Shown here piece after piece: positions 10,391 through 51,429 of a stretch of DNA of 64,000 bases. Below the pieces are notes generated by a model. That model was given only the letters and a program-made list of their open reading frames with translations. It did not search any database and was not told where the DNA came from. The stretch spans positions 62,001 through 126,000 of IMG/VR virus record IMGVR_UViG_3300021963_000023, one strand, 5' to 3'. The first letter of the stretch is position 1. Every line of letters begins with the position of its first letter. The position numbers were made by a program, and so were the translations under genes.

Positions 10391-10416
10391 AAAGTGGTCA
10401 ATTTGACCACTTTTTT
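10391..10416 (+). terminator. intrinsic terminator
   Basis: AAAGTGGTCA/TGACCACTTT stem followed by Ts. Confidence 0.75.
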
Positions 10417-10429
10417 CATATTTATATAT

Positions 10430-12217
10430 ATGAGTCAAAAAATAGAACAATTAAAAGAGTATGCTCGCATAATAAAAGATACTCCATACGCACTTAAAAC
10501 ATATCTTCAAACCTTTGATAATACACAGAGAAAGTTTGTACCATTAGAGTTGTTTCCGGATCAAATACAATTATTAAAAGATTACGAAACATATAACGAG
10601 AATATCACAAGAAAATATCGTCAAGCTGGTGTTACAACAGTAACGGCCGCATGGTTATCAAAAAAATTACAATTAGCAAAACCAGAAAACCCAGAAAGGG
10701 TTTTGATTATCGCAAACAAGCGTGATACCGCAATTGAGATGGCGAATAAAGTTCGTCACTTTTTAGATCAATGGCCAGAATGGATTAATGTGGGGTTTTC
10801 ACCAGATAAAAATTCAGAAAGTAGATTTAGGTTAAATAACGGATCAGAGGTAAAAGCTGTGGCCACATCTGCGGATGCTCTTCGTGGTTTTACACCAACG
10901 ATATTAGTATTTGATGAGGCCGCGTATATTGAGGCTGGAGATGACTTCTGGGCGGCTTCTATGGCCTCGTTATCAACCGGTGGTAAGATTATATTAATCT
11001 CAACGCCAAATGGCTACGATCCAATTTATTACGGTGTTTATGAACAAGCAATAAGAGGTATTAATGATTTTCATATAACCGATTTAAGATGGTTTAAAGA
11101 TCCTAGATATACTAAAGATTTAGTTTGGATTAAAGTTCCCGATATTGTGCATTACATGTTGAACAGAGAACAATATAATGATGATGAGATTATTTTAAAG
11201 GAATTTGATATAACAAAATACCAAGAATTAATGGATGAGGGTTATCAACCATATTCAAATTGGTTTGAGTCCATGTCCAAAAAATTCAAATATGACAAAA
11301 GAAAAATAGCACAAGAACTTGAATGTGATTTCTTGGGTTCCGGTGATAGCGTTATACCAAATGAAACAATGGAAAAAATCGCTAAAACAATGGTTAAAGT
11401 ACCAAAAGAAAAATATATGCAAGGTTTGCTTTGGCAATGGAATGAACCAGTTCAGGGTCATAGATATATTATGGGAGTTGATGTTAGTAGAGGAGATAGC
11501 GAGGATTTTTCATCAATTAATATTATTGATTTTGATGAAAGGGAGCAAGTTGTTGAATATGTTGGTAAAATGCCACCAGATGATTTAGCATCTGTCGCTT
11601 ATAAATGGGGTGTATTATATGATGCGTTTATTGTAATTGATATAACAGGTGGTATGGGTGTTGCAACATCAAGAAAATTGCAAGAAATGAATTATAAAAA
11701 CTTATTCATTGATGGTATTAATACCAAGAATGTTTGGGAATATAATGCAAAAGCAATGGAAAAAATACCTGGTATTAATTTTAACAATAAAAGAACACAA
11801 ATAGTTTCAGCATTTGAGGAACAATTGAGACATGATTTTATTGTTAGATCACATAGGCTTTTAAATGAACTCAATACCTTTGTTTATATAAATGGTAGAC
11901 CGGATCACATGAAAGGACAACATGACGATTCTATTATGAGTTTAGCAATTGCGTTATATGCTGGAGAGATATCGTTTACACAATTAGTTAGAAATGAACA
12001 GCAAAACAAAGCAATGTTAGATTCTTGGGTTATGTCTGAAAGAACATATCAATCGCCACAAACAGAAACATACTCATATGGTACTAGCTTTGATCAGGTT
12101 GGTATGATGCAGATTGATAGTTCACCATATGCTAAGAGTAATACTAACGGAACGCCAGCAAAAGAACAGTACAATCAATATTCTTGGTTGTTTGGAACAA
12201 ATAAAAAGGCTTTATAA
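10430..12217 (+). CDS. terminase large subunit (T4 gp17-like)
   Basis: RQAGVTT Walker A variant, LVFDEAA Walker B, ISTPNG, QELECDF, nuclease GVDVSRG and HDDSIMSLA; ATG 10430 chosen because it lies after the terminator and promoter motif. Confidence 0.93.
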   Translation: MSQKIEQLKEYARIIKDTPYALKTYLQTFDNTQRKFVPLELFPDQIQLLKDYETYNENITRKYRQAGVTTVTAAWLSKKLQLAKPENPERVLIIANKRDTAIEMANKVRHFLDQWPEWINVGFSPDKNSESRFRLNNGSEVKAVATSADALRGFTPTILVFDEAAYIEAGDDFWAASMASLSTGGKIILISTPNGYDPIYYGVYEQAIRGINDFHITDLRWFKDPRYTKDLVWIKVPDIVHYMLNREQYNDDEIILKEFDITKYQELMDEGYQPYSNWFESMSKKFKYDKRKIAQELECDFLGSGDSVIPNETMEKIAKTMVKVPKEKYMQGLLWQWNEPVQGHRYIMGVDVSRGDSEDFSSINIIDFDEREQVVEYVGKMPPDDLASVAYKWGVLYDAFIVIDITGGMGVATSRKLQEMNYKNLFIDGINTKNVWEYNAKAMEKIPGINFNNKRTQIVSAFEEQLRHDFIVRSHRLLNELNTFVYINGRPDHMKGQHDDSIMSLAIALYAGEISFTQLVRNEQQNKAMLDSWVMSERTYQSPQTETYSYGTSFDQVGMMQIDSSPYAKSNTNGTPAKEQYNQYSWLFGTNKKAL

Positions 12218-14067: not shown

Positions 14068-14817
14068 ATGAACAAATTCGGAACGATTAAAACCAAAATG
14101 TTAACTAAAATAACTGAATCTTATTCTAAACAAAATAAGAATGAAGTAAAAGATATGTTAAACACAATTAAAGAAAACAAAGCATTTAAAGAAATGTATT
14201 TGTTTTATGAAGAAATTGAGAATAAATATTTTGACAATAAAGAGATCGCGATACTATATGTTGAGGGATTAAATACATATTTTGGTCAACCAATGGGTAA
14301 TTGGAATGATTTAAATGTCTTTTGCGAATCACTACATAAAAAATTGGGGGATATTAAAATTGAAACTAACGAACTATATGAATCTTTAGATATATTATCT
14401 GAAAAAGATTCATTATCAAATATTGAAAAAAAGGTTATTGCAAAAAAGAAACTAGTTGAACATTTAACAACAAAAAAGTCAGTAAAAACCATTGTTGAGG
14501 ATAGTACATATACAGCAAATGAAAATTTGTTGCATGCGGTATTAGTAAACAATTTTAACACATTATATGAGAATACATTATCTCAAGAAGATAAAGAAGC
14601 TCTTAAAAACATATTAGTATTAAATGGTGAGGAGTTGGTAACAAAAACATCTGAACTAAAAGAAGCTATCCTTACTAAGGTTCAAAATATACTATCAGAA
14701 TCTAAGGATACTGATTTAGGTGTAAAACTTGAATCAGTTAGAACTGAGGTTACCACAATGGAACCATCAAAATATAACTACTACAGATTAACACAATTAA
14801 AAAATGGTCTTGATTAA
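14068..14817 (+). CDS. hypothetical protein in head module
   Basis: 249 aa helical ORF directly after portal. Confidence 0.65.
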   Translation: MNKFGTIKTKMLTKITESYSKQNKNEVKDMLNTIKENKAFKEMYLFYEEIENKYFDNKEIAILYVEGLNTYFGQPMGNWNDLNVFCESLHKKLGDIKIETNELYESLDILSEKDSLSNIEKKVIAKKKLVEHLTTKKSVKTIVEDSTYTANENLLHAVLVNNFNTLYENTLSQEDKEALKNILVLNGEELVTKTSELKEAILTKVQNILSESKDTDLGVKLESVRTEVTTMEPSKYNYYRLTQLKNGLD

Positions 14818-15005
14818 TTCAGACCATTTTTTAACTTTTCCACATAAACGGCTTTTAATACTTCGGCTCTTCTTTTAACTGAAGGCTTAACAAACTTTTC
14901 TCTTTCCCTTAGTTTTTGGATTTGTTTAGTTTTTTGTACTTTACTTTTGTAACTTTTAAGAGCAGATTCAATGCTCTTTTCTTTTTTCATGTCAATTATA
15001 ATCAT
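14814..15005 (-). CDS. rpsU: ribosomal protein bS21 (phage-encoded)
   Basis: SIESALKSYKSK...LRERE.FVKPSVKRR...KAVY is the bS21 signature with a Bacteroidetes-type C-terminus. Confidence 0.92.
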   Translation of the reverse strand: MIIIDMKKEKSIESALKSYKSKVQKTKQIQKLREREKFVKPSVKRRAEVLKAVYVEKLKNGLN

Positions 15006-35004: not shown

Positions 35005-35658
35005 TTAAAAATCTGGGTATTTTTTTGTTTCGCCAAATTTATTTCTAGCGACACTATCTTTTCTTGAATTAACGTCTGTTAATGATCCAACAGATCCGTT
35101 GTTTTCTCCTTTACCCTTTTCATCACCATCAGATAATGCATTGGGATTTTTAGAATTATAAGCGTTTTGATTATTATATGAATTTCTAGATAAACTTTCC
35201 GTCCTAACTTTGATATCTGTTAATGAACCAATTTTACCACTATTTTCACCCTTTCCCTTTTCATCATCATCAGATAATGCATTAGGACTAGTTACACCAT
35301 ATGCTTTGTTTTGTAAATATGTATTTTTAGACATTAACTCATTTCTTGTTAATATGTCTACAGATGAGCCAATAGTTCCATTTTCACCTTTACCTTTTTC
35401 ATCACCATCAGATAATGCGTTAACATTTTTTGAATTATATTGATTATTTGATGAATATGGATTTCTAAGAAGGTTTTCAACTCTGGCTTGAATATCTACA
35501 GATGATCCAATTGTACCAGCTTCTCCTTTACCTTTTTCATCACCATTTGATAGTGCATTTTCATGTGTTACACCGTAGCCATTTTTTTCAACGTATGAAT
35601 TTCTTGTTAAATGTGCCTGTCTTTCTTTTTCAGCAATGATTTCTAATTGTGTTGCCAT
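35005..35658 (-). CDS. tandem-repeat protein (4 x 46-47 aa)
   Basis: Repeated NALSDGDEKGKGE..G.IGS..D. Confidence 0.75.
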   Translation of the reverse strand: MATQLEIIAEKERQAHLTRNSYVEKNGYGVTHENALSNGDEKGKGEAGTIGSSVDIQARVENLLRNPYSSNNQYNSKNVNALSDGDEKGKGENGTIGSSVDILTRNELMSKNTYLQNKAYGVTSPNALSDDDEKGKGENSGKIGSLTDIKVRTESLSRNSYNNQNAYNSKNPNALSDGDEKGKGENNGSVGSLTDVNSRKDSVARNKFGETKKYPDF

Positions 35659-38407: not shown

Positions 38408-38430
38408 AATAAACAAACTATTTATAACAT

Positions 38431-44708: not shown

Positions 44709-44761
44709 ACATTATGAAATATAAGTAATTACAAACACTTTCTAAACTATTTATAGATATT

Positions 44762-45275: not shown

Positions 45276-46511
45276 ATGGCCATACCTAAAAGAAAAACAG
45301 ATATTCAAATATACAAGGGTAAACAACTTACCGAAAGAAGACAAGAACTATTGGAAAAAATAACCAAGTCAGATTCGTATCTTCCTGATTCTGTTTTACA
45401 TGACGATTTAGATTCTGGAATGTTAGAGTTTATTAAGAAAAACTTTGTTGTTGTTTCTGATGGTAGTCAAATACCGGTAATCCCAAAAATATTAACAATT
45501 CAAAGATGGGCCCAAATTATGAATACTTGGGAGTTTTCTGATGATGACGGTAATCTAAAGGTTCCATTTGTTGGTGTTATAAGAAGACCAGATGTTCAAC
45601 CAGGAACTAACCCATCAGTTATCAGAACAATACCAGATAGATTACAATTTCATTATGCTTCAGTTGCAACTTGGAATGGAACACAAATGGGCGCTGATGT
45701 ATATAAGATACCTCAACCGGTGGCCGTAGACATAACATTTGAAGTAACCATTGTTTGTACGAAACTTAGAGAATTAAATAGATTTAATAAAATTGTTCTA
45801 CAGAAATTTGCCTCAAGACAAGCTTACACCATTGTAAAAGGTCATTATATTCCAATTATAATGGATAAGGTTGAAGATAATTCTCCTGTTGATCAAATAG
45901 ATGGGCGTAGATTTTATATGCAAACATATCAATTTACCATGTTAGGGTTTCTTATCGACCAAGATGAATTTGAGGTTAAACCAGCGGTTAGTAGATTTTT
46001 CTTAATGAATGAGTTCGCAAAAAATTCTAATTTTCAGAAAAAATATATTAATAAAACAATTGATATAACGGTTGCTACGTTTTTGGCGGATGGCTTACAG
46101 ACCGCATTTAGTGTTGGTGAAAGTATTGGTATTTTATTTAATGTGACAATTAATGGTATAATACAAGAAAGAGACGTTAACTACTTCCATGTTGCTGGAA
46201 CTTCTAAAATTACCTTCCCAGAAGCACCTTATGAAGGAAGTAATGTTACAGTAACTTATTATAAAGGTAGAAATAGTGTTTTTATTGATAATTACGGAAA
46301 ACCAATTCAGGTAGAAACAGAACATTTTATATATAATGGGTCAACTTTGGTGTTTACGGTTATGAACGCAATTAATAGTGTTGTTGGTGTAGATATTAAC
46401 GGTCTTGCTGATGAAGAGGGTGTTGGTTTCAATATCACTAGTGAAACTCAAATTACCTTAACTTCAGCGCCTGTACTTGGATCAAGAATTGGTGTTAATT
46501 ATTTATATTAA
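45276..46511 (+). CDS. tail terminator/completion protein (gp15-like) with C-terminal repeat extension
   Basis: PQPVAVDITFEV, position before sheath; two beta-rich repeats at C-terminus. Confidence 0.55.
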   Translation: MAIPKRKTDIQIYKGKQLTERRQELLEKITKSDSYLPDSVLHDDLDSGMLEFIKKNFVVVSDGSQIPVIPKILTIQRWAQIMNTWEFSDDDGNLKVPFVGVIRRPDVQPGTNPSVIRTIPDRLQFHYASVATWNGTQMGADVYKIPQPVAVDITFEVTIVCTKLRELNRFNKIVLQKFASRQAYTIVKGHYIPIIMDKVEDNSPVDQIDGRRFYMQTYQFTMLGFLIDQDEFEVKPAVSRFFLMNEFAKNSNFQKKYINKTIDITVATFLADGLQTAFSVGESIGILFNVTINGIIQERDVNYFHVAGTSKITFPEAPYEGSNVTVTYYKGRNSVFIDNYGKPIQVETEHFIYNGSTLVFTVMNAINSVVGVDINGLADEEGVGFNITSETQITLTSAPVLGSRIGVNYLY

Positions 46512-46666
46512 TCCTCATCATATAGGTCAGTTTTTTTAGGCTTACAAGTGTCTTCTATTAATTTTTCTAAAATTTTATAAATTTTAAGCCCTTTCTTATC
46601 ACAGTATGATTTTAGCATCTCGTGGTGTTTTTCACTGATTTTCACATTTTTAGTTTTGTTTTCCAT
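46508..46666 (-). CDS. ribbon-helix-helix-like DNA-binding protein (52 aa), not in ORF track
   Basis: MENKTKNVKISEKHHEMLKSYCDKKGLKIYKILEKLIEDTCKPKKTDLYDED. Confidence 0.65.
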   Translation of the reverse strand: MENKTKNVKISEKHHEMLKSYCDKKGLKIYKILEKLIEDTCKPKKTDLYDED

Positions 46667-46670
46667 ATAT

Positions 46671-46700
46671 AAAGATAAATAATGATAAAAAAGGATAAAT
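46671..46700. repeat. three 10-bp direct repeats (AANGATAAAW)
   Basis: aaagataaat aatgataaaa aaggataaat. Confidence 0.5.
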
Positions 46701-46792
46701 AACTATCTAAATACAGAAAATTTGAGAAATCTTTGCTTAAAACAAAGATATTTATTTGGAAAGAATAAAATTATTTAACCAAACATTTATCA

Positions 46793-49630
46793 ATGGCAAA
46801 TTCAAACAGAGTATTCGTGTCTCCGGGTGTGTACACATCAGAGAAGGATCTAACATTCGTAGCGCAGAGCGTTGGAGTTACAACATTGGGTCTAGTGGGT
46901 GAGACTTTAAAAGGTCCGGCATTTGAACCAATTTTGATTTCTAATTTCGACGAATTTAAAGTATATTTTGGTACTACCAGTCCAGCAAAGTACGGAGATG
47001 GTAACCCAAAATATGAGCTTCCATATGTAGCTAAATCATATTTACAAGAATCAAATCAATTATTTGTAACTAGAGTTTTAGGATTAACTGGCTACAAACC
47101 AGGAAAGACCTATGGAATTAAAACATTAGGAGGTATTACTGTTGATCTAACAAGTACCCCAACAACAAGCGGTAGTACATTAACACCTACATCTTTAACA
47201 ACAATAACAGGTGCAACATTTTATGCTGAACTTTCAGGTAAAACATCAACAGAAGGTACATCAATTACTGATTACTTAATTGCTGGTTCAAATTCTAATG
47301 GGGCATATGCTCTTAACGAATGGTTTACAATTGGTACGGTGCCAGCATCTGCAACAAGTGGATTAACTGGAACACAGTTAGTATCACCTATTGGAAATGC
47401 TAACAAGAACTGGTATAACAATTACTTTGTAAAAAGTGGTTCTACCGATTCAACAATTCATGGTGTATATTCATACCTTTTTGTTTTAACAGGTGCATCA
47501 TCATTTAGTGTTACAAGATACAAGTATTCAGCGTCATTAAATGCTGACTATGCTGGTAGAACTGTATGTTTATTAAGATCTAGGGGTTCATACGTATCAA
47601 ACGCACTTGTACACAGAGTAACTGGTGCAACTGCCGTTCAAATTACGGGGGCAACTATTGATACTAATCCATTGGGTGAATTTAATTTAGCTATTACCGA
47701 TGTTGCTTCGATTGTAAACAACTTTACGTGTTCTTTCGACACATCTTCTTCAAAATATATCACCAAAATACTTGGTACTGATGTTTTTGATAAAGAAAAG
47801 GTTGAATATCCAATTTATGTTCACGAAGTATATCCAAATTTAATAAACAACTTGTTTGAACAAGGTTTAATTAGAGGTTTAAGTACAGATGAACAAGTTT
47901 TAACAGAGGTGGATAATTTTGTTACACAATGGGATATGGCAGGGTCATCAACAGTAGTTTCTGAAGTTAGAGGCGGGAAGGTTTTTGATTTATTCAGTTT
48001 CTTAACTGTATCAGATGGTGATACTTCTAACTATGAAGTTAAAATAACAATTTCAAATATTGACATTGACACAGCAGAATTTGATATTCTTGTTCGTGAT
48101 TTTAATGATACCGATACTAATCAAGTTGTTTTGGAGAAATTCACAAGATGTACAATGAATCCAGATTTACCAGGATATGTTGGTAGAAAGGTTGGTACAT
48201 CAGATGGAGAGTATGAATTAAGATCTAAGTATATTATGCTTGTTTTAGCTGAGGAGCATCCAACAGACGCATTCCCAGCTGGGTTCAAGGGAGTAACAAC
48301 AAGATCTGAAATAGGTGAAATTCTTTATAAAACAAAATACTATGATGCAGGTGATGTATTATACTATGACGCTAGCGGAAATCCAGTTACCACAAATGGT
48401 GATAAAGTTAAAAAAGTAACTTTAGGATTTTCAACAGATGGTAATTTTATATATGATAGAGACATGTTAAAGTTTAAGGGTAAGGTAGCAGCCGGATCAA
48501 CATTTGGTTTCCACTTATCAACAAATGCGTCATCAATCACTGGAACAACTGGTAGTAAATTATTTAAAACAACAGCATATGATTTAGAAGGAATTAACAA
48601 AGGTAAATTAGCAACTACATCATATAGAAAATTCACTCTACCATTATTTGGTGGTTTTGATGGTTGGGACATTTATAGAAATACAAGAACAAATGGTGAC
48701 GGGTATGTATTTGGTAAAACAACGTATATAAGTGGTCACACTGGAAACGGTGGTGTATTCAGCAGTACAGTTGGAAACTCAGATTACTATGCATACTTAC
48801 AAGCTATTGAAACATATGCAAATCCTGAAGCAGTAGATATTAACATATTTGCAACACCAGGTATTGATTGGAATAATCATAGTTCATTAGTTAATCAAGG
48901 AATTGATATTATTGAAAATGATAGAGCGGATTCATTATACATTATCAACTCACCTAACTATACAACTGCTGATGAAACAATTTCATCTTTAGATGATTTA
49001 GGTCTTGATAGTAACTATTCTGCAACATATTGGCCTTGGATTCAAGTAAGAGATACAGATAATGCAACACAGCTTTTTATACCGCCAACAGGTGAAGTAT
49101 TAAAGAACATAGCATTGACTGATAACGTTTCTTATCCTTGGTTTGCTGTGGCGGGTTACTCAAGAGGTCTTGTTAACGCAATAAAAGCACAAAAGAAATT
49201 AACTCTTGATGAAAGAGATAATCTTTATAAAGCCAGAATTAACCCAATCGCAACTTTCTCTGATACAGGTACTATTATCTGGGGTAACAAAACGTTACAA
49301 GTTAGAGAATCAGCATTAGATAGAATCAACGTAAGAAGATTGTTATTGAGAGCTAGAAAGTTAATCTCTGCAGTAGCTGTAAGATTGTTATTTGAACAAA
49401 ATGACGAACAAGTTAGACAAGAGTTCTTAAGATTGGTAAATCCAATTCTTGAGTCAATTAAGAAAGAAAGAGGTTTATATGACTTCCGTGTAAGTGTATC
49501 TAACGATCCAGAGGATATTGATGCAAACACATTAAGAGGTAAAATATACATAAAACCAACAAGAGCATTGGAATTCATTGATGTTGAATTCATTATTACT
49601 CCAACGGGTGCTTCTTTTGAAAATATCTAA
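46793..49630 (+). CDS. tail sheath protein (gp18-like)
   Basis: FVSPGVYTSEKD, YWPW, WFAVAGYSRG, RINPI, WGNKTL, RINVRRL. Confidence 0.96.
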   Translation: MANSNRVFVSPGVYTSEKDLTFVAQSVGVTTLGLVGETLKGPAFEPILISNFDEFKVYFGTTSPAKYGDGNPKYELPYVAKSYLQESNQLFVTRVLGLTGYKPGKTYGIKTLGGITVDLTSTPTTSGSTLTPTSLTTITGATFYAELSGKTSTEGTSITDYLIAGSNSNGAYALNEWFTIGTVPASATSGLTGTQLVSPIGNANKNWYNNYFVKSGSTDSTIHGVYSYLFVLTGASSFSVTRYKYSASLNADYAGRTVCLLRSRGSYVSNALVHRVTGATAVQITGATIDTNPLGEFNLAITDVASIVNNFTCSFDTSSSKYITKILGTDVFDKEKVEYPIYVHEVYPNLINNLFEQGLIRGLSTDEQVLTEVDNFVTQWDMAGSSTVVSEVRGGKVFDLFSFLTVSDGDTSNYEVKITISNIDIDTAEFDILVRDFNDTDTNQVVLEKFTRCTMNPDLPGYVGRKVGTSDGEYELRSKYIMLVLAEEHPTDAFPAGFKGVTTRSEIGEILYKTKYYDAGDVLYYDASGNPVTTNGDKVKKVTLGFSTDGNFIYDRDMLKFKGKVAAGSTFGFHLSTNASSITGTTGSKLFKTTAYDLEGINKGKLATTSYRKFTLPLFGGFDGWDIYRNTRTNGDGYVFGKTTYISGHTGNGGVFSSTVGNSDYYAYLQAIETYANPEAVDINIFATPGIDWNNHSSLVNQGIDIIENDRADSLYIINSPNYTTADETISSLDDLGLDSNYSATYWPWIQVRDTDNATQLFIPPTGEVLKNIALTDNVSYPWFAVAGYSRGLVNAIKAQKKLTLDERDNLYKARINPIATFSDTGTIIWGNKTLQVRESALDRINVRRLLLRARKLISAVAVRLLFEQNDEQVRQEFLRLVNPILESIKKERGLYDFRVSVSNDPEDIDANTLRGKIYIKPTRALEFIDVEFIITPTGASFENI

Positions 49631-49647
49631 TATTACAATAAAATAAG

Positions 49648-49678
49648 AATGGGGATGGCTAAAAACCTCCCCATTTTT
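49648..49678 (+). terminator. intrinsic terminator after sheath
   Basis: AATGGGGA/TCCCCATT stem followed by Ts. Confidence 0.75.
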
Positions 49679-49680
49679 GT

Positions 49681-49808
49681 ATAGTATATTGAATATCAGT
49701 AAATTAGTTAATTAGAATAAAAGAATATAAGTAAATCAGAATATCAGAAATATTAGTATATTAGTACATTAGAATATTAGTATTTTAGAATTTTAGTAAG
49801 TTAGTAGC
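49681..49808. repeat. tandem array of 16 degenerate 8-mers (TTAGWAWA)
   Basis: Parsed by hand: atagtata ttgaata tcagtaaa ttagttaa ttagaata aaagaata taagtaaa tcagaata tcagaaata ttagtata ttagtaca ttagaata ttagtatt ttagaatt ttagtaag ttagtagc. Confidence 0.85.
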
Positions 49809-49921
49809 AAAAAGCTAAGGAAAAAAAACGAGAAAAACAACTATTTTACAAAATAAATTTTATTTCACATATTGATATATTTATAGGAAAGAAATAAACA
49901 CAAAATTATAATACAAAAACA

Positions 49922-50410
49922 ATGGCAGATTTATTAATGAAAATGCCGGTTCCATATGAACCGAAACGCAAAAATAGGTTTATCTTAAGATTTCCATCAT
50001 CTTTAGGTATTAACGAATGGTATGTAACATCTACTGCTCGTCCTAGTGCTAAAATTAACTCAACAGAAATTCCATTTTTAAATACTTCAACATACGTAGC
50101 AGGTAGATTTACATGGGACCCAATCAAAGTTACTTTTAAAGACCCAATTGGTCCTTCAGCATCTCAGGCTCTTATGGAATGGTTTCGCTTACACGCAGAA
50201 TCGGTTACAGGTAGAATGGGCTACGCCGCAGGTTACAAGAAAAACGTAGAATTAGAAATGTTAGACCCAACAGGAGTTGTAGTTGAGAAATGGATAATGG
50301 AAGGTTGTTTCTTAACTAGTTTAAACTTTGGTGATTTGAACTACTCTCAAGATGAATTAGCAACAATTGATGCTGAATTGAGAATGGATAGATGTATCCA
50401 AGTATACTAA
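49922..50410 (+). CDS. tail tube protein (gp19-like)
   Basis: EPKRKNRF, YVAGRFTWDPI.VTF.D, YKKN..L..LDP.G..VEKW; follows sheath. Confidence 0.9.
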   Translation: MADLLMKMPVPYEPKRKNRFILRFPSSLGINEWYVTSTARPSAKINSTEIPFLNTSTYVAGRFTWDPIKVTFKDPIGPSASQALMEWFRLHAESVTGRMGYAAGYKKNVELEMLDPTGVVVEKWIMEGCFLTSLNFGDLNYSQDELATIDAELRMDRCIQVY

Positions 50411-50468: not shown

Positions 50469-50484
50469 CGTTCCATGTGGAACC
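50469..50484. promoter_or_regulatory. parS-like palindrome
   Basis: cGTTCCAtGTGGAACc, 13/16 match to TGTTCCACGTGGAACA, intergenic. Confidence 0.5.
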
Positions 50485-50549
50485 TTTTTCATTACCAATT
50501 GATTTTCTAATAAATTATACTTATATTAAAAGAAACAAATTAATTTAAT

Positions 50550-51290
50550 ATGGATAATATAAACCCAATGGTTGCATATGATGTGGTATCCTTACCATCT
50601 CAAGGTGTACACTATTCCAACGGAAAGAAAACATTAAGAGTAGCTTATCTAACGGCTGCAGATGAAAATATTCTAATGTCCCCCAATTTAATACAATCCG
50701 AAACGGTTGTTGATGAATTATTAAAAAGAAAAATATTGGATAAAGACCTTAGTTATGAGGATCTTGTTGAGGAAGATAAACAAGCTATTTTAATATTTTT
50801 AAGAAATACAGCATTTGGTACAGAATATACATTAACATTAACCGATCCAGCAACTAAGAAATCTTTTGAGGGAATACTAGATTTATCTGTATTAAAGGTT
50901 AAAGATTTTAAATTAGTTGCTGATTCAAATGGCGAATATTCATACATATTACCAATGTCTAAGAAAAATATAACATTTAACTTCTTAACAAACACACAAG
51001 AAAAAGAATTACAGAACATTAAAGAATCAAGTGGATCATCGGTTTCTCCAGTTAATACTAAAAAACTTGAGATGATGATTAAATCTATTGATGGTCAACG
51101 AGATCAAATGGCAATATATCAATTTATTCAAAATCTACCAATCAAAGATTCACAAGATTTTAAAAAATTCGTATCAGAAAATAAACCAGGTTTAGACCTA
51201 ATAGTTGATGTAATCGCCCCGTCAGGAGAAAAAGTCCCAGTTTTGGTTGACTTTGGGGTGGAGTTTTTTCGTCCCTTCTACGGAATATAA
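50550..51290 (+). CDS. tail assembly chaperone / baseplate hub assembly protein (gp26-like)
   Basis: VSLPSQG.HY, LTAADENIL, D..AILIFLR, ends FFRP; between tube and tape measure. Confidence 0.75.
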   Translation: MDNINPMVAYDVVSLPSQGVHYSNGKKTLRVAYLTAADENILMSPNLIQSETVVDELLKRKILDKDLSYEDLVEEDKQAILIFLRNTAFGTEYTLTLTDPATKKSFEGILDLSVLKVKDFKLVADSNGEYSYILPMSKKNITFNFLTNTQEKELQNIKESSGSSVSPVNTKKLEMMIKSIDGQRDQMAIYQFIQNLPIKDSQDFKKFVSENKPGLDLIVDVIAPSGEKVPVLVDFGVEFFRPFYGI

Positions 51291-51414: not shown

Positions 51415-51429
51415 AACTATTTATATAAT

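What the first reader, a model, noticed from the sequence alone, without database searches (positions are those of the whole stretch)
49681..49808. Sixteen-copy 8-bp array between sheath terminator and tube promoter
Seen: a non-coding, strand-asymmetric (almost C-free) array with consensus TTAGWAWA and 8-nt period, followed by an A-rich tract, in an otherwise tightly packed tail operon. Inference: iteron-like replication origin, centromere-like site or packaging-related protein-binding array.
Basis: partly seen in the sequence, partly recalled or inferred. Interest (0 to 1): 0.65.

Follow-up and report, generated by a model that had tools for sequence, protein, structure and literature searches.

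The report
TTAG-box array upstream of tail-tube promoter
A real, selectively maintained run of about 16 short TTAG boxes sits in the untranscribed gap before the tail-tube gene of an uncultured freshwater jumbo phage; it most likely serves as a docking strip for a small DNA-binding protein, and it shows no sign of being a replication origin, centromere or packaging site.

Summary
The array is real. There are 14 in-register 8-nt units plus 2 degenerate ones at 49681-49808, with consensus TTAG(T/A)A(T/A)A. It is the only period-8 element in the 251-kb phage genome.

It lies between the sheath terminator (49651-49678) and a conserved A-rich block (49807-49828). That block precedes the tube promoter core TATTTATA (49878-49885).

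All 22 contigs of the window's clade carry an array at this position. They have 12-21 units with a period of 8 or 7 and the same TTAGWA core. Aligned array positions are more conserved than fourfold-degenerate sites in the flanking genes.

More distant relatives have 5-14 irregularly spaced CTAG/CCAG/CTGG boxes at the same place instead. This holds even in genomes that avoid CTAG elsewhere. The array is therefore the regularised, C-to-T version of a family-wide box cluster.

No support was found for the other readings:
- Origin: no GC-skew inflection.
- Centromere: no ParA-type gene.
- Packaging site: the large terminase gene is 37 kb away.
- Structured RNA: no fold beyond shuffled controls and no Rfam match.

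Best guess (about 0.35): a multi-site docking platform on double-stranded DNA for a small regulator, organised like ParG on parH/OF. A ParG-like 52-aa ribbon-helix-helix gene, conserved in every relative examined, lies 3 kb upstream. Binding was not tested.

The parts
46508..46666 (-). 52-aa ribbon-helix-helix (ParG/CopG-like) gene, divergent from the sheath gene. It is a candidate binder only.
   Evidence: Pfam gives RepB-RCR_reg E 6e-4 and ParG E 4e-3, both just under cut-off. The best PDB sequence hit is ParG 1p94. The AlphaFold model has an extended N-terminus and two helices, and the Foldseek list is uniformly RHH, with ParG at probability 0.94. The gene is present at the same place in all 78 relatives' loci that cover it, and KNVKIS is invariant in nearly all of them (KNIKIS or KNLKIS in three clades).
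46793..49630 (+). Tail sheath gene (945 aa)
   Evidence: phrog_23 E 1.6e-62; Pfam Phage_sheath_1 and Phage_sheath_1C.
49651..49678 (+). Intrinsic terminator of the sheath transcript: GC stem with one bulge, 7-nt loop and a T5 run
   Evidence: Read from the sequence. It forms the strongest stem in the RNA fold of the intergenic region. Every relative has a GC hairpin plus T-run at this place, with a different sequence in each clade.
49681..49808 (+). The array: 14 clean and 2 degenerate 8-nt units, TTAG(T/A)A(T/A)A, all in one orientation
   Evidence: It is conserved in all 22 clade contigs with 12-21 units. Substitutions between relatives fall mainly in unit columns 2, 5 and 7.
49807..49828 (+). 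Conserved A-rich block (GCAAAAAGCTAAGG followed by A8), directly abutting the last box
   Evidence: It is identical in all 22 contigs retrieved with it and recognisable across the whole family.
49829..49841 (+). Degenerate counterpart of the TGACAAAGTCAA-type inverted repeat that relatives carry here
   Evidence: Alignment of the intergenic regions. The palindrome is intact in L013, L016, L018 and most distant relatives, and decayed in the window.
49878..49885 (+). Tube promoter core TATTTATA, 36 nt before the ATG
   Evidence: The motif was found de novo upstream of about 75 of 255 genes. This site scores 11.9 bits and is the only site above 4 bits in the intergenic region.
49922..50410 (+). 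Tail tube gene (162 aa, gp19-like)
   Evidence: phrog_4542 E 2.8e-29; Pfam Phage_T4_gp19, just below cut-off.
50470..50492 (+). Terminator-like hairpin (GTTCC...GGAAC) plus T-run after the tube gene. The same hairpin type sits as a second terminator in front of the box cluster in many relatives.

Best explanation
The array is the window clade's regularised version of a family-wide cluster of short (C/T)TAG boxes. The cluster occupies the gap between the sheath terminator and the conserved upstream block of the tail-tube late promoter. I think it acts on double-stranded DNA as a multi-site, high-avidity docking strip for a small sequence-specific DNA-binding protein. One dimer would bind each 4-bp box plus its 3-4-bp A/T spacer, so that 12-21 dimers coat about 130 bp. 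This is how ParG coats parH/OF, omega coats its heptads and MetJ coats tandem met boxes. The coated strip would tune or insulate the tube promoter about 70-200 bp downstream. Shown: the array itself; its uniqueness in the genome; its position between a terminator and a promoter; its presence in every clade member; sequence constraint above synonymous sites; homology of position with CTAG-box clusters in hundreds of relatives; and the existence of conserved RHH genes in the genome. Inferred: that a protein binds the array, which protein that is, and the effect on transcription.
For: (1) Uniqueness and regularity: lag-8 identity is 0.658, 7.7 sd above the genome mean, and no second cluster of boxes lies in any intergenic region. 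Double boxes in two relatives' genomes also occur only at this locus. (2) Position: the array follows a strong terminator, and no promoter motif lies upstream of it. Three of four metatranscriptomes that cover both the sheath and tube genes have no contig over 49632-49885; the fourth has only low-depth contigs there. This favours a role in DNA over RNA. (3) Conservation: all 22 contigs sharing the A-block have an array of 12-21 units with period 8 or 7 and the same TTAGWA core. Meanwhile the terminator sequence has turned over completely between subclades. (4) Constraint: array identity to L003, L004 and L007 is 0.88-0.94, against 0.67-0.86 at fourfold-degenerate sites of the sheath and tube genes. 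Fifty-seven consecutive array bases are identical to L004. Substitutions per unit column are [2,6,0,1,9,1,9,3], which spares T.AG.A. (5) Family-wide homologue: relatives carry 5-14 CTAG/CCAG/CTGG boxes at the same place, always ending at the A-block. The density is 12 CTAG per kb here against 0.58 per kb outside, in genomes that otherwise avoid CTAG with O/E 0.33. (6) Architecture: a 4-bp box plus a 4-bp AT spacer, in direct or inverted orientation and 8-20 copies, is exactly the organisation of the ParG sites parH and OF, where affinity rises with box number (PMC3130281). (7) A ParG-like RHH gene is conserved 3 kb upstream in every relative, and a second RHH-like gene lies elsewhere in the genome.
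Against: No binding has been tested, and no tool here can model protein-DNA binding. The nearby RHH has a near-invariant DNA-reading strand across clades whose boxes differ (CTAG versus TTAG). Its own promoter region carries different conserved boxes, AGATA at a 10-bp period, and no CYRG boxes, so it may not be the binder. Box spacing is irregular (6-25 nt) in other clades and switches between 7 and 8 within the window's clade. That is awkward for a rigid cooperative filament. A few lineages (L056, L057, L074) have lost most boxes, so the element is not indispensable. Exclusive use of TTAG, never CTAA, fits a founder unit amplified by slippage as well as it fits selection.
Confidence: 0.35

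Rival explanations
1. Nearly neutral slippage product. A single TTAG-bearing unit, derived from an ancestral CTAG box next to a lost distal promoter, was amplified by replication slippage in a tolerant AT-rich spacer. The array persists by concerted evolution and has no function beyond keeping terminator and promoter apart.
For: Copy number ranges from 12 to 21. Whole-unit indels separate near-identical phages: L007 and L011 differ by one 8-nt unit. The period switches between 8 and 7 among subclades. All boxes have one orientation, as expected from one founder unit. Distant relatives have a high-scoring distal TATTTAT motif at this place that the window clade lacks, and the L016/L018 units (TATTTAG) look like decayed copies of it. 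Some lineages lost most boxes. C-to-T loss on the sense strand matches the genome-wide strand skew.
Against: Aligned array positions are more conserved than fourfold-degenerate sites of both flanking genes, and 57 consecutive bases are identical to L004. The TTAGWA core is the same in subclades whose terminators share no sequence. Substitutions avoid the T.AG.A columns, though over the 19 unique positions the test is only marginal, p about 0.09. The homologous box cluster is kept in genomes that purge CTAG elsewhere.
Confidence: 0.2
2. Replication origin. The boxes are short iterons for an initiator, the AT-rich array acts as the unwinding element, and the adjacent promoter activates or primes initiation, as at T4 oriF/oriG or the iteron-bearing oriE.
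For: The array is single-copy per genome. The intergenic region is the least stable 250-bp duplex in 251 kb, ranking 1 at 250 bp and 3 at 130 bp. Repeats, an A-tract block and an inverted repeat lie next to a promoter. Many relatives have a promoter motif inside the box cluster.
Against: Cumulative GC and AT skew follow gene orientation with no inflection near genome position 111.7 kb. Units are 7-8 bp rather than the usual 17-22 bp. No replication initiator gene is adjacent; the DNA polymerase and helicase genes are 5-10 kb away on other transcription units. The window clade lacks the internal promoter. The low duplex stability follows simply from this being the longest non-coding AT-rich gap.
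Confidence: 0.12
3. RNA-level element. In read-through or leader RNA, the NAG triplets every 7-8 nt bind a multimeric RNA-binding protein, in the manner of TRAP on (G/U)AG repeats or HutP on UAG-N4 repeats. This would control tube expression or RNA stability.
For: The element is strictly one-stranded: G is kept and C is nearly absent on the sense strand. Tolerance of 7-, 8- or 9-nt spacing suits a flexible single strand. The sense RNA has no fold beyond shuffled controls, so the triplets would be accessible. One metatranscriptome has low-depth contigs across the terminator and the array. In about half of the distant relatives a promoter motif lies upstream of part of the boxes.
Against: The array lies after a strong terminator, or two in many relatives, and no promoter motif scores above 4 bits upstream of it in the window. 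Three of four RNA data sets do not cover it although both flanking genes are covered. In relatives the boxes are palindromic and occur in both orientations. The TRAP and HutP comparisons rest on my own knowledge, and no homologue was sought.
Confidence: 0.12
4. Centromere-like partition site, or a packaging (pac) recognition array.
For: The array is built like the type Ib centromeres parH and omega-parS. A ParG-like RHH is encoded nearby. The element is single-copy.
Against: No ParA/CbiA-type ATPase is detectable in the 251 kb held; the same searches score in all 14 control genomes. The phage is a T4-like myovirus with no sign of a plasmid state. The large terminase gene is at window 10394-12217, 37 kb away, whereas pac sites normally lie in or next to the terminase genes (my own knowledge). 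Relatives' contig ends do not coincide with the locus. The genome record is only about 75% complete, so absence of a gene is not proof.
Confidence: 0.05

Closest known systems
parH centromere and OF operator of plasmid TP228, bound by the RHH protein ParG
   Same: Both have 4-bp boxes separated regularly by 4-bp AT-rich spacers (8-bp period). The TP228 boxes are degenerate, direct or inverted, with 8 (OF) and 12 (parH) copies upstream of a promoter, one dimer per box, and affinity that rises with box number (PMC3130281). The window has 14-16 direct boxes, and relatives have about 8 of mixed orientation. The best structural and sequence match of the neighbouring 52-aa protein is ParG.
   Different: The box sequence is TTAG/CTAG rather than ACTC. 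No ParF/ParA partner was found. The host replicon is a lytic-type T4-like jumbo phage. The array sits inside a late structural operon rather than upstream of the RHH gene, and the RHH's own promoter carries different boxes. Binding is untested.
Omega repressor heptad arrays (pSM19035 parS/operators) and MetJ tandem met boxes
   Same: RHH dimers bind 7-bp (omega) or 8-bp (MetJ) units head to tail and wrap the DNA. The 7- and 8-bp periods both occur in the window's clade. Papers on omega were listed but not read, so the details are from my own knowledge.
   Different: Those arrays have 2-10 units and overlap the regulated promoters. Here 12-21 units lie 70-200 bp upstream of the promoter core.
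E. coli TrpR tandem binding at CTAG-centred sites spaced 8 bp (from my own knowledge; no paper retrieved)
   Same: Relatives carry ACTAGT/TTCTAGAA-type sites, and CCAG-N4-CTGG palindromes with 8-bp spacing.
   Different: No TrpR-family gene is present in the genome. The window's boxes are TTAG, not CTAG.
TRAP and HutP RNA targets ((G/U)AG triplet repeats)
   Same: Both have NAG triplets repeated many times on one strand with short variable spacers.
   Different: The spacers are 4-5 nt, against 2-3 nt for TRAP. The array is not downstream of a detectable promoter, and relatives' boxes are palindromic.

Membership tests
Iteron-type replication origin | GC-skew or strand-bias switch at the site | tested here: not met
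   Cumulative skew rises steadily through genome positions 105-125 kb and follows gene strand.
Iteron-type replication origin | AT-rich unwinding element next to the repeats | tested here: met
   The intergenic region is the least stable 250-bp window of the genome by nearest-neighbour energy.
Iteron-type replication origin | Iterons of about 17-22 bp with an adjacent initiator gene | tested here: not met
   Units are 7-8 bp, and the flanking genes are the sheath and tube genes.
Type Ib partition centromere (parH, omega-parS) | Tandem 7-8-bp boxes, direct or inverted | tested here: met
Type Ib partition centromere (parH, omega-parS) | Walker-type ParA ATPase encoded by the replicon | tested here: not met
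   PF13614 and PF01656 give no match in 251 kb, while the controls are positive. The record is about 75% complete.
Type Ib partition centromere (parH, omega-parS) | RHH centromere-binding protein that binds the boxes | tested here: inconclusive
   A ParG-like RHH gene lies 3 kb upstream. Its specificity is unknown, and its own promoter has AGATA boxes rather than TTAG boxes.
pac site | Lies in or next to the terminase genes, with genome ends generated nearby | tested here: not met
   TerL is at window 10394-12217, and contig ends of relatives are not at the locus. Read-end pile-ups could not be examined.
RHH operator array (MetJ, ParG OF, omega, CopG) | Repeated short boxes at a 7-11-bp period next to a promoter | tested here: met
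   The array ends 70 bp upstream of the promoter core.
RHH operator array (MetJ, ParG OF, omega, CopG) | Demonstrated binding by a cognate RHH dimer | not testable with these tools
   No protein-DNA docking or experiment is available here.
TRAP/HutP-type triplet-repeat RNA site | Located in a transcribed leader downstream of a promoter | tested here: not met
   No promoter motif above 4 bits lies upstream of the array, and it follows a terminator. RNA contigs are absent in 3 of 4 runs.
Structured non-coding RNA | Fold more stable than shuffled sequence, or an Rfam match | tested here: not met
   The z-score is -0.5 on the sense strand and +1.6 on the antisense strand. No Rfam match approaches a gathering score.

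The most novel reading that the evidence does not exclude
The (C/T)TAG-box cluster is the single cis site of an undescribed control module shared by a very large family of freshwater T4-like jumbo phages (at least 594 contigs). In this reading a ParG-like RHH, or another small protein, polymerises on 8-20 boxes upstream of the tube gene. It would act as a fixed enhancer or insulator for T4-type late transcription, or double as an origin or segregation-like anchor. The window clade would have re-tuned the module from a few strong CTAG sites to many weaker TTAG sites.
Probability: 0.12. Interest if true: 0.75.

Novelty: new variant of a known kind. Interest (0 to 1): 0.45.

Why it matters
Nothing is known about gene regulation in this abundant, uncultured family of freshwater jumbo phages. 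The family is T4-like, shows no Shine-Dalgarno use, and probably infects Bacteroidota. This work defines its promoter motif. It also defines a conserved, single-copy cis element in front of one of the most highly demanded structural genes, and a short list of candidate binders that can be synthesised and tested in vitro without a cultured host. If the boxes do recruit an RHH filament, that would extend the parH/omega style of DNA coating from plasmid maintenance to late-gene control in a lytic phage. If they do not, the locus is still a useful, fast-evolving strain marker (12-21 units).

Tried and rejected
- Nucleotide search of the sheath-tube region against INPHARED phages found nothing. By protein, the nearest cultured phage has only 34% identity.
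- Long RNA hairpin in relatives: single-sequence folds give z-scores from -0.9 to -4.9. RNAalifold on 16 sequences supports only local CCAG-N4-CTGG pairs. The window's array has no such fold.
- Array units as promoters: the promoter weight matrix never tolerates G in the core, and the units score below 4 bits.
- A regulon of boxes elsewhere: none was found in any intergenic region of the genome. The one other cluster lies in a coding Pro/Thr-rich stretch.
- GTGGAAC enrichment turned out to be Gly-Gly-Thr codons in fibre-like genes, not a signal.
- CTAG-to-TTAG change as restriction avoidance: the pattern is the reverse of what that idea predicts. The clades that avoid CTAG keep CTAG boxes.
- TAG recoding: there is no suppressor tRNA among the 22 tRNAs, and TAA and TGA close every frame of the array.
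- TrpR homologue: none found. ParA: none found.
- Literature searches for a described equivalent found nothing relevant.
- RNA evidence comes from assembled contigs only. It therefore cannot show transcript ends or strand, and a gap in coverage is weak evidence.

Full report
**Context**

The window is positions 62001-126000 of a 251,149-bp IMG/VR virus record, which is linear and about 75% complete. The DNA is 31% G+C. The genes identify a T4-like myovirus:
- sheath, 46793-49630
- gp19-like tube, 49922-50410
- T4-type baseplate protein, 50550-51290
- family B DNA polymerase, helicase and major head protein
- large terminase at 10394-12217

There is no nucleotide match among cultured phages. 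The nearest sheath protein, from Microcystis phage Mel-JY01, is 34% identical. Genes lack Shine-Dalgarno sequences (15 of 255) and have A-rich leaders. From my own knowledge this is typical of Bacteroidota hosts. Runs holding near-identical DNA are mostly freshwater and lake metagenomes, although the two best holders are labelled marine.

**The observation**

The array is there as described. An AG occurs every 8 nt, with one 9-nt step. There are 14 in-register units from 49696 to 49808 and two degenerate units before them. The consensus is TTAG(T/A)A(T/A)A, and there are only 5 C in 129 nt. Tandem Repeats Finder reports period 8 (13.5 copies) and also periods 16 and 24. In 120-nt windows the lag-8 self-identity is 0.658, against a genome mean of 0.279 (sd 0.049). 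The second-best place in the whole genome reaches 0.483. So this is the only element of its kind in 251 kb.

**Surroundings**

The sheath stop codon (49628-49630) is followed by a bulged GC hairpin and a T5 run at 49651-49678. I read this from the sequence; it is also the dominant stem in the RNA fold. The simple scanner missed it because of the bulge.

I defined the phage's promoter independently. The octamer TATTTATA lies in gene orientation a few to a few dozen nt before the ATG of long ORFs: 43 of 52 forward copies are followed by an ORF. An unbiased EM search gave a motif (not T)TATTTAT(A/t) upstream of about 75 of 255 genes, with G never tolerated in the core. In the sheath-tube spacer the only site above 4 bits is at 49878-49885 (11.9 bits), 36 nt before the tube ATG.

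The array therefore lies between a terminator and a promoter. It abuts a 22-nt A-rich block (49807-49828). The 291-nt spacer is the only long gap between co-directional genes in this genome that contains neither a small ORF nor tRNAs.

**Relatives in the window's clade**

A search with the sheath protein found more than 594 related stretches in IMG/VR. All 72 loci that cover both genes have a long spacer, 237-345 nt (938 nt in two loci with an inserted gene). Scanning IMG/VR for the exact A-block returned 22 contigs with 13 distinct arrays (14 counting the window), and every one has an array. The arrays have 12-21 units. The period is 8 in the window's subclade and in the L013/L096 subclade, and 7 in L016/L018/L089. 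The core TTAG(T/A)A is the same throughout. Whole-unit insertions separate otherwise near-identical phages; L007 and L011 differ by one unit. The terminator hairpins of these subclades share no sequence, so neutral DNA has fully diverged while the array kept its core.

**Is it constrained?**

I compared the window with L003, L004 and L007. Identity at fourfold-degenerate sites is 0.67-0.79 in the sheath gene and 0.80-0.86 in the tube gene. Aligned array positions are 0.88-0.94 identical, and the other spacer segments are 0.89-0.99 identical. The first 57 array bases are identical to L004.

Alignment of repeats inflates identity, so this is indicative rather than exact. The 57-base run is not an alignment artefact, however. 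Substitutions between orthologous units fall per column as [2,6,0,1,9,1,9,3], sparing T.AG.A. That distribution gives p of about 0.001 when counted per comparison, but only about 0.09 over the 19 unique positions. I read all this as moderate evidence of purifying selection.

**The wider family**

Distant relatives (sheath 71% identity or less) have no regular array. At the same place, always ending at the A-block, they carry 5-14 CTAG, CCAG or CTGG boxes where about 1 is expected. The arrangements vary:
- 12-bp palindromes such as CCAG-TATA-CTGG
- runs of CTAGTT at a 6-nt period
- 13 one-directional CTAGAA boxes (L178)
- spacings of up to 25 nt

About half of the clades also have a second, high-scoring promoter motif in the middle of the cluster, and half do not. 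So the boxes, not that promoter, are the shared feature. Three lineages (L056, L057, L074) have lost most boxes.

Single-sequence folds suggest a long hairpin in some clades, with z-scores down to -4.9. The alignment-based fold supports only local box-to-box pairs.

The distant clades strongly avoid short palindromes elsewhere. O/E values are GCGC 0.17, GATC 0.23, CATG 0.29, CTAG 0.33 and CCAG/CTGG 0.55. Yet they hold 12 CTAG per kb in this spacer, against 0.58 per kb outside it. The window's clade shows almost no such avoidance and has TTAG boxes instead.

The window's array is thus best seen as one TTAG-bearing box, a C-to-T derivative of CTAG, amplified into a regular array. Exclusive use of TTAG rather than CTAA fits a founder unit. 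The loss of C on the sense strand matches the genome-wide strand skew.

**What it is not**

- *Origin.* Cumulative GC skew follows gene orientation and has no inflection here. The spacer is, however, the least stable 250-bp duplex in the genome, so an origin cannot be excluded.
- *Centromere.* No ParA-type gene is detectable.
- *Packaging site.* The terminase gene is 37 kb away.
- *Structured RNA.* The sense and antisense RNAs of the array fold no better than shuffles, and Rfam finds nothing.
- *Second copy or regulon.* None exists.
- *Coding under a recoded TAG.* TAG is not recoded: none of the 22 tRNAs has a CUA anticodon.
- *Abundant transcript.* Metatranscriptome contigs cover the sheath and tube genes in four runs. 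They cover the spacer in only one run, at low depth. This is weak evidence, because contigs cannot prove absence.

**Candidate binders**

A 52-aa ORF at 46508-46666 on the minus strand, divergent from the sheath gene, is a ribbon-helix-helix protein. The evidence is:
- Pfam RepB-RCR_reg (E 6e-4) and ParG (E 4e-3), both just under cut-off.
- ParG is the best PDB sequence hit.
- The model has an extended N-terminus and two helices.
- The fold-search list is uniformly RHH, headed by ParG.

The ORF is present at the same place in all 78 relatives' loci that cover it. Its predicted DNA-reading strand is KNVKIS in nearly all of them (KNIKIS or KNLKIS in three clades). Its own promoter region carries conserved AGATA boxes at a 10-bp period and no CTAG-type boxes. 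It is therefore a natural candidate, but there is no sequence evidence that it reads the array. A second RHH-like ORF (83 aa) lies at genome 24834-25085 and has a homologue in a distant relative.

**Interpretation**

The architecture is a 4-bp box plus a 3-4-bp A/T spacer, in direct or inverted orientation, in 8-20 copies next to a promoter. This is the organisation of the ParG sites OF and parH of plasmid TP228. There, one RHH dimer binds each box and affinity rises with box number (PMC3130281). It also resembles omega heptad arrays and MetJ met boxes (my own knowledge).

I therefore favour a DNA-level docking strip for a small regulator that tunes or insulates the tube late promoter, with confidence about 0.35. 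The main rivals are:
- a nearly neutral slippage array that replaced an older operator/promoter (0.20)
- an origin (0.12)
- an RNA-level NAG-repeat site (0.12)
- a centromere or pac site (0.05)

None of these can be settled without binding assays, stranded RNA ends or read-depth profiles.

**Verdict**

Its three specific functions are not supported. The element is a new variant of a known kind of cis element, with an untested mechanism, and is of moderate interest.

Noticed in passing
whole genome; e.g. window 49878-49885, 51418-51425, 44748-44755, 38419-38426: The phage promoter motif is (not T)TATTTAT(A/t), found upstream of about 75 of 255 genes. The commonest spacing to the ATG is only 4 nt (11 genes), which suggests leaderless or nearly leaderless mRNAs. 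The motif is the reverse complement of the T4 late-promoter octamer TATAAATA.
   Followed up: partly
window 46667-46755: The divergent region between the RHH gene and the sheath gene has three AGATA-type boxes at a 10-bp period plus an inverted TATCT, conserved across the family. It also has a perfect inverted repeat, ATCTTTG-N7-CAAAGAT (46729-46749), overlapping the sheath promoter core (46749-46755). This is probably the RHH's own operator and a sheath-promoter operator.
   Followed up: partly
window 14814-15005 (-): A phage-encoded ribosomal protein bS21 (Pfam Ribosomal_S21, E 2e-11).
   Followed up: no
genome 39720-50489 (outside the window, upstream of it): A cluster of 21 tRNA genes and a tmRNA gene on the minus strand, plus one more tRNA near genome position 246.8 kb. 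None is a suppressor tRNA.
   Followed up: partly
relatives' loci L019-L081 versus L003-L018 and the window's genome: Sister clades strongly avoid the 4-bp palindromes GCGC, GATC, CATG, CTAG and CCGG (O/E 0.17-0.54). The window's clade barely does (mostly 0.75-1.1; CATG about 0.5). This suggests a different host restriction load or a protective DNA modification.
   Followed up: partly
L071:5926-6579 (-), also L070: A 217-aa GDSL/SGNH-hydrolase-like gene is inserted on the opposite strand in the sheath-tube spacer of two relatives, between the first terminator and the box cluster.
   Followed up: partly
relatives, e.g. L036:5958-6037: In about half of the distant clades a second full-strength promoter motif sits in the middle of the CTAG-box cluster, 130-190 nt upstream of the proximal tube promoter.
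   Followed up: partly
genome 24834-25085 (+), outside the window: A second small RHH-like ORF (83 aa; weak hits to RHH_1 and NikA-like) has its own TATTTATA promoter. A 56%-identical homologue is present in a distant relative.
   Followed up: partly
window 35242-35559: A 138-bp tandem repeat (2.3 copies, 74% matches) lies inside minus-strand ORFs.
   Followed up: no
It has no Pfam match.
   Followed up: partly
window 49627-49646 versus 49761-49780: The end of the sheath gene and the start of the spacer are 75% complementary over 20 nt to part of the array. This is probably a chance effect of AT-rich sequence.
   Followed up: no
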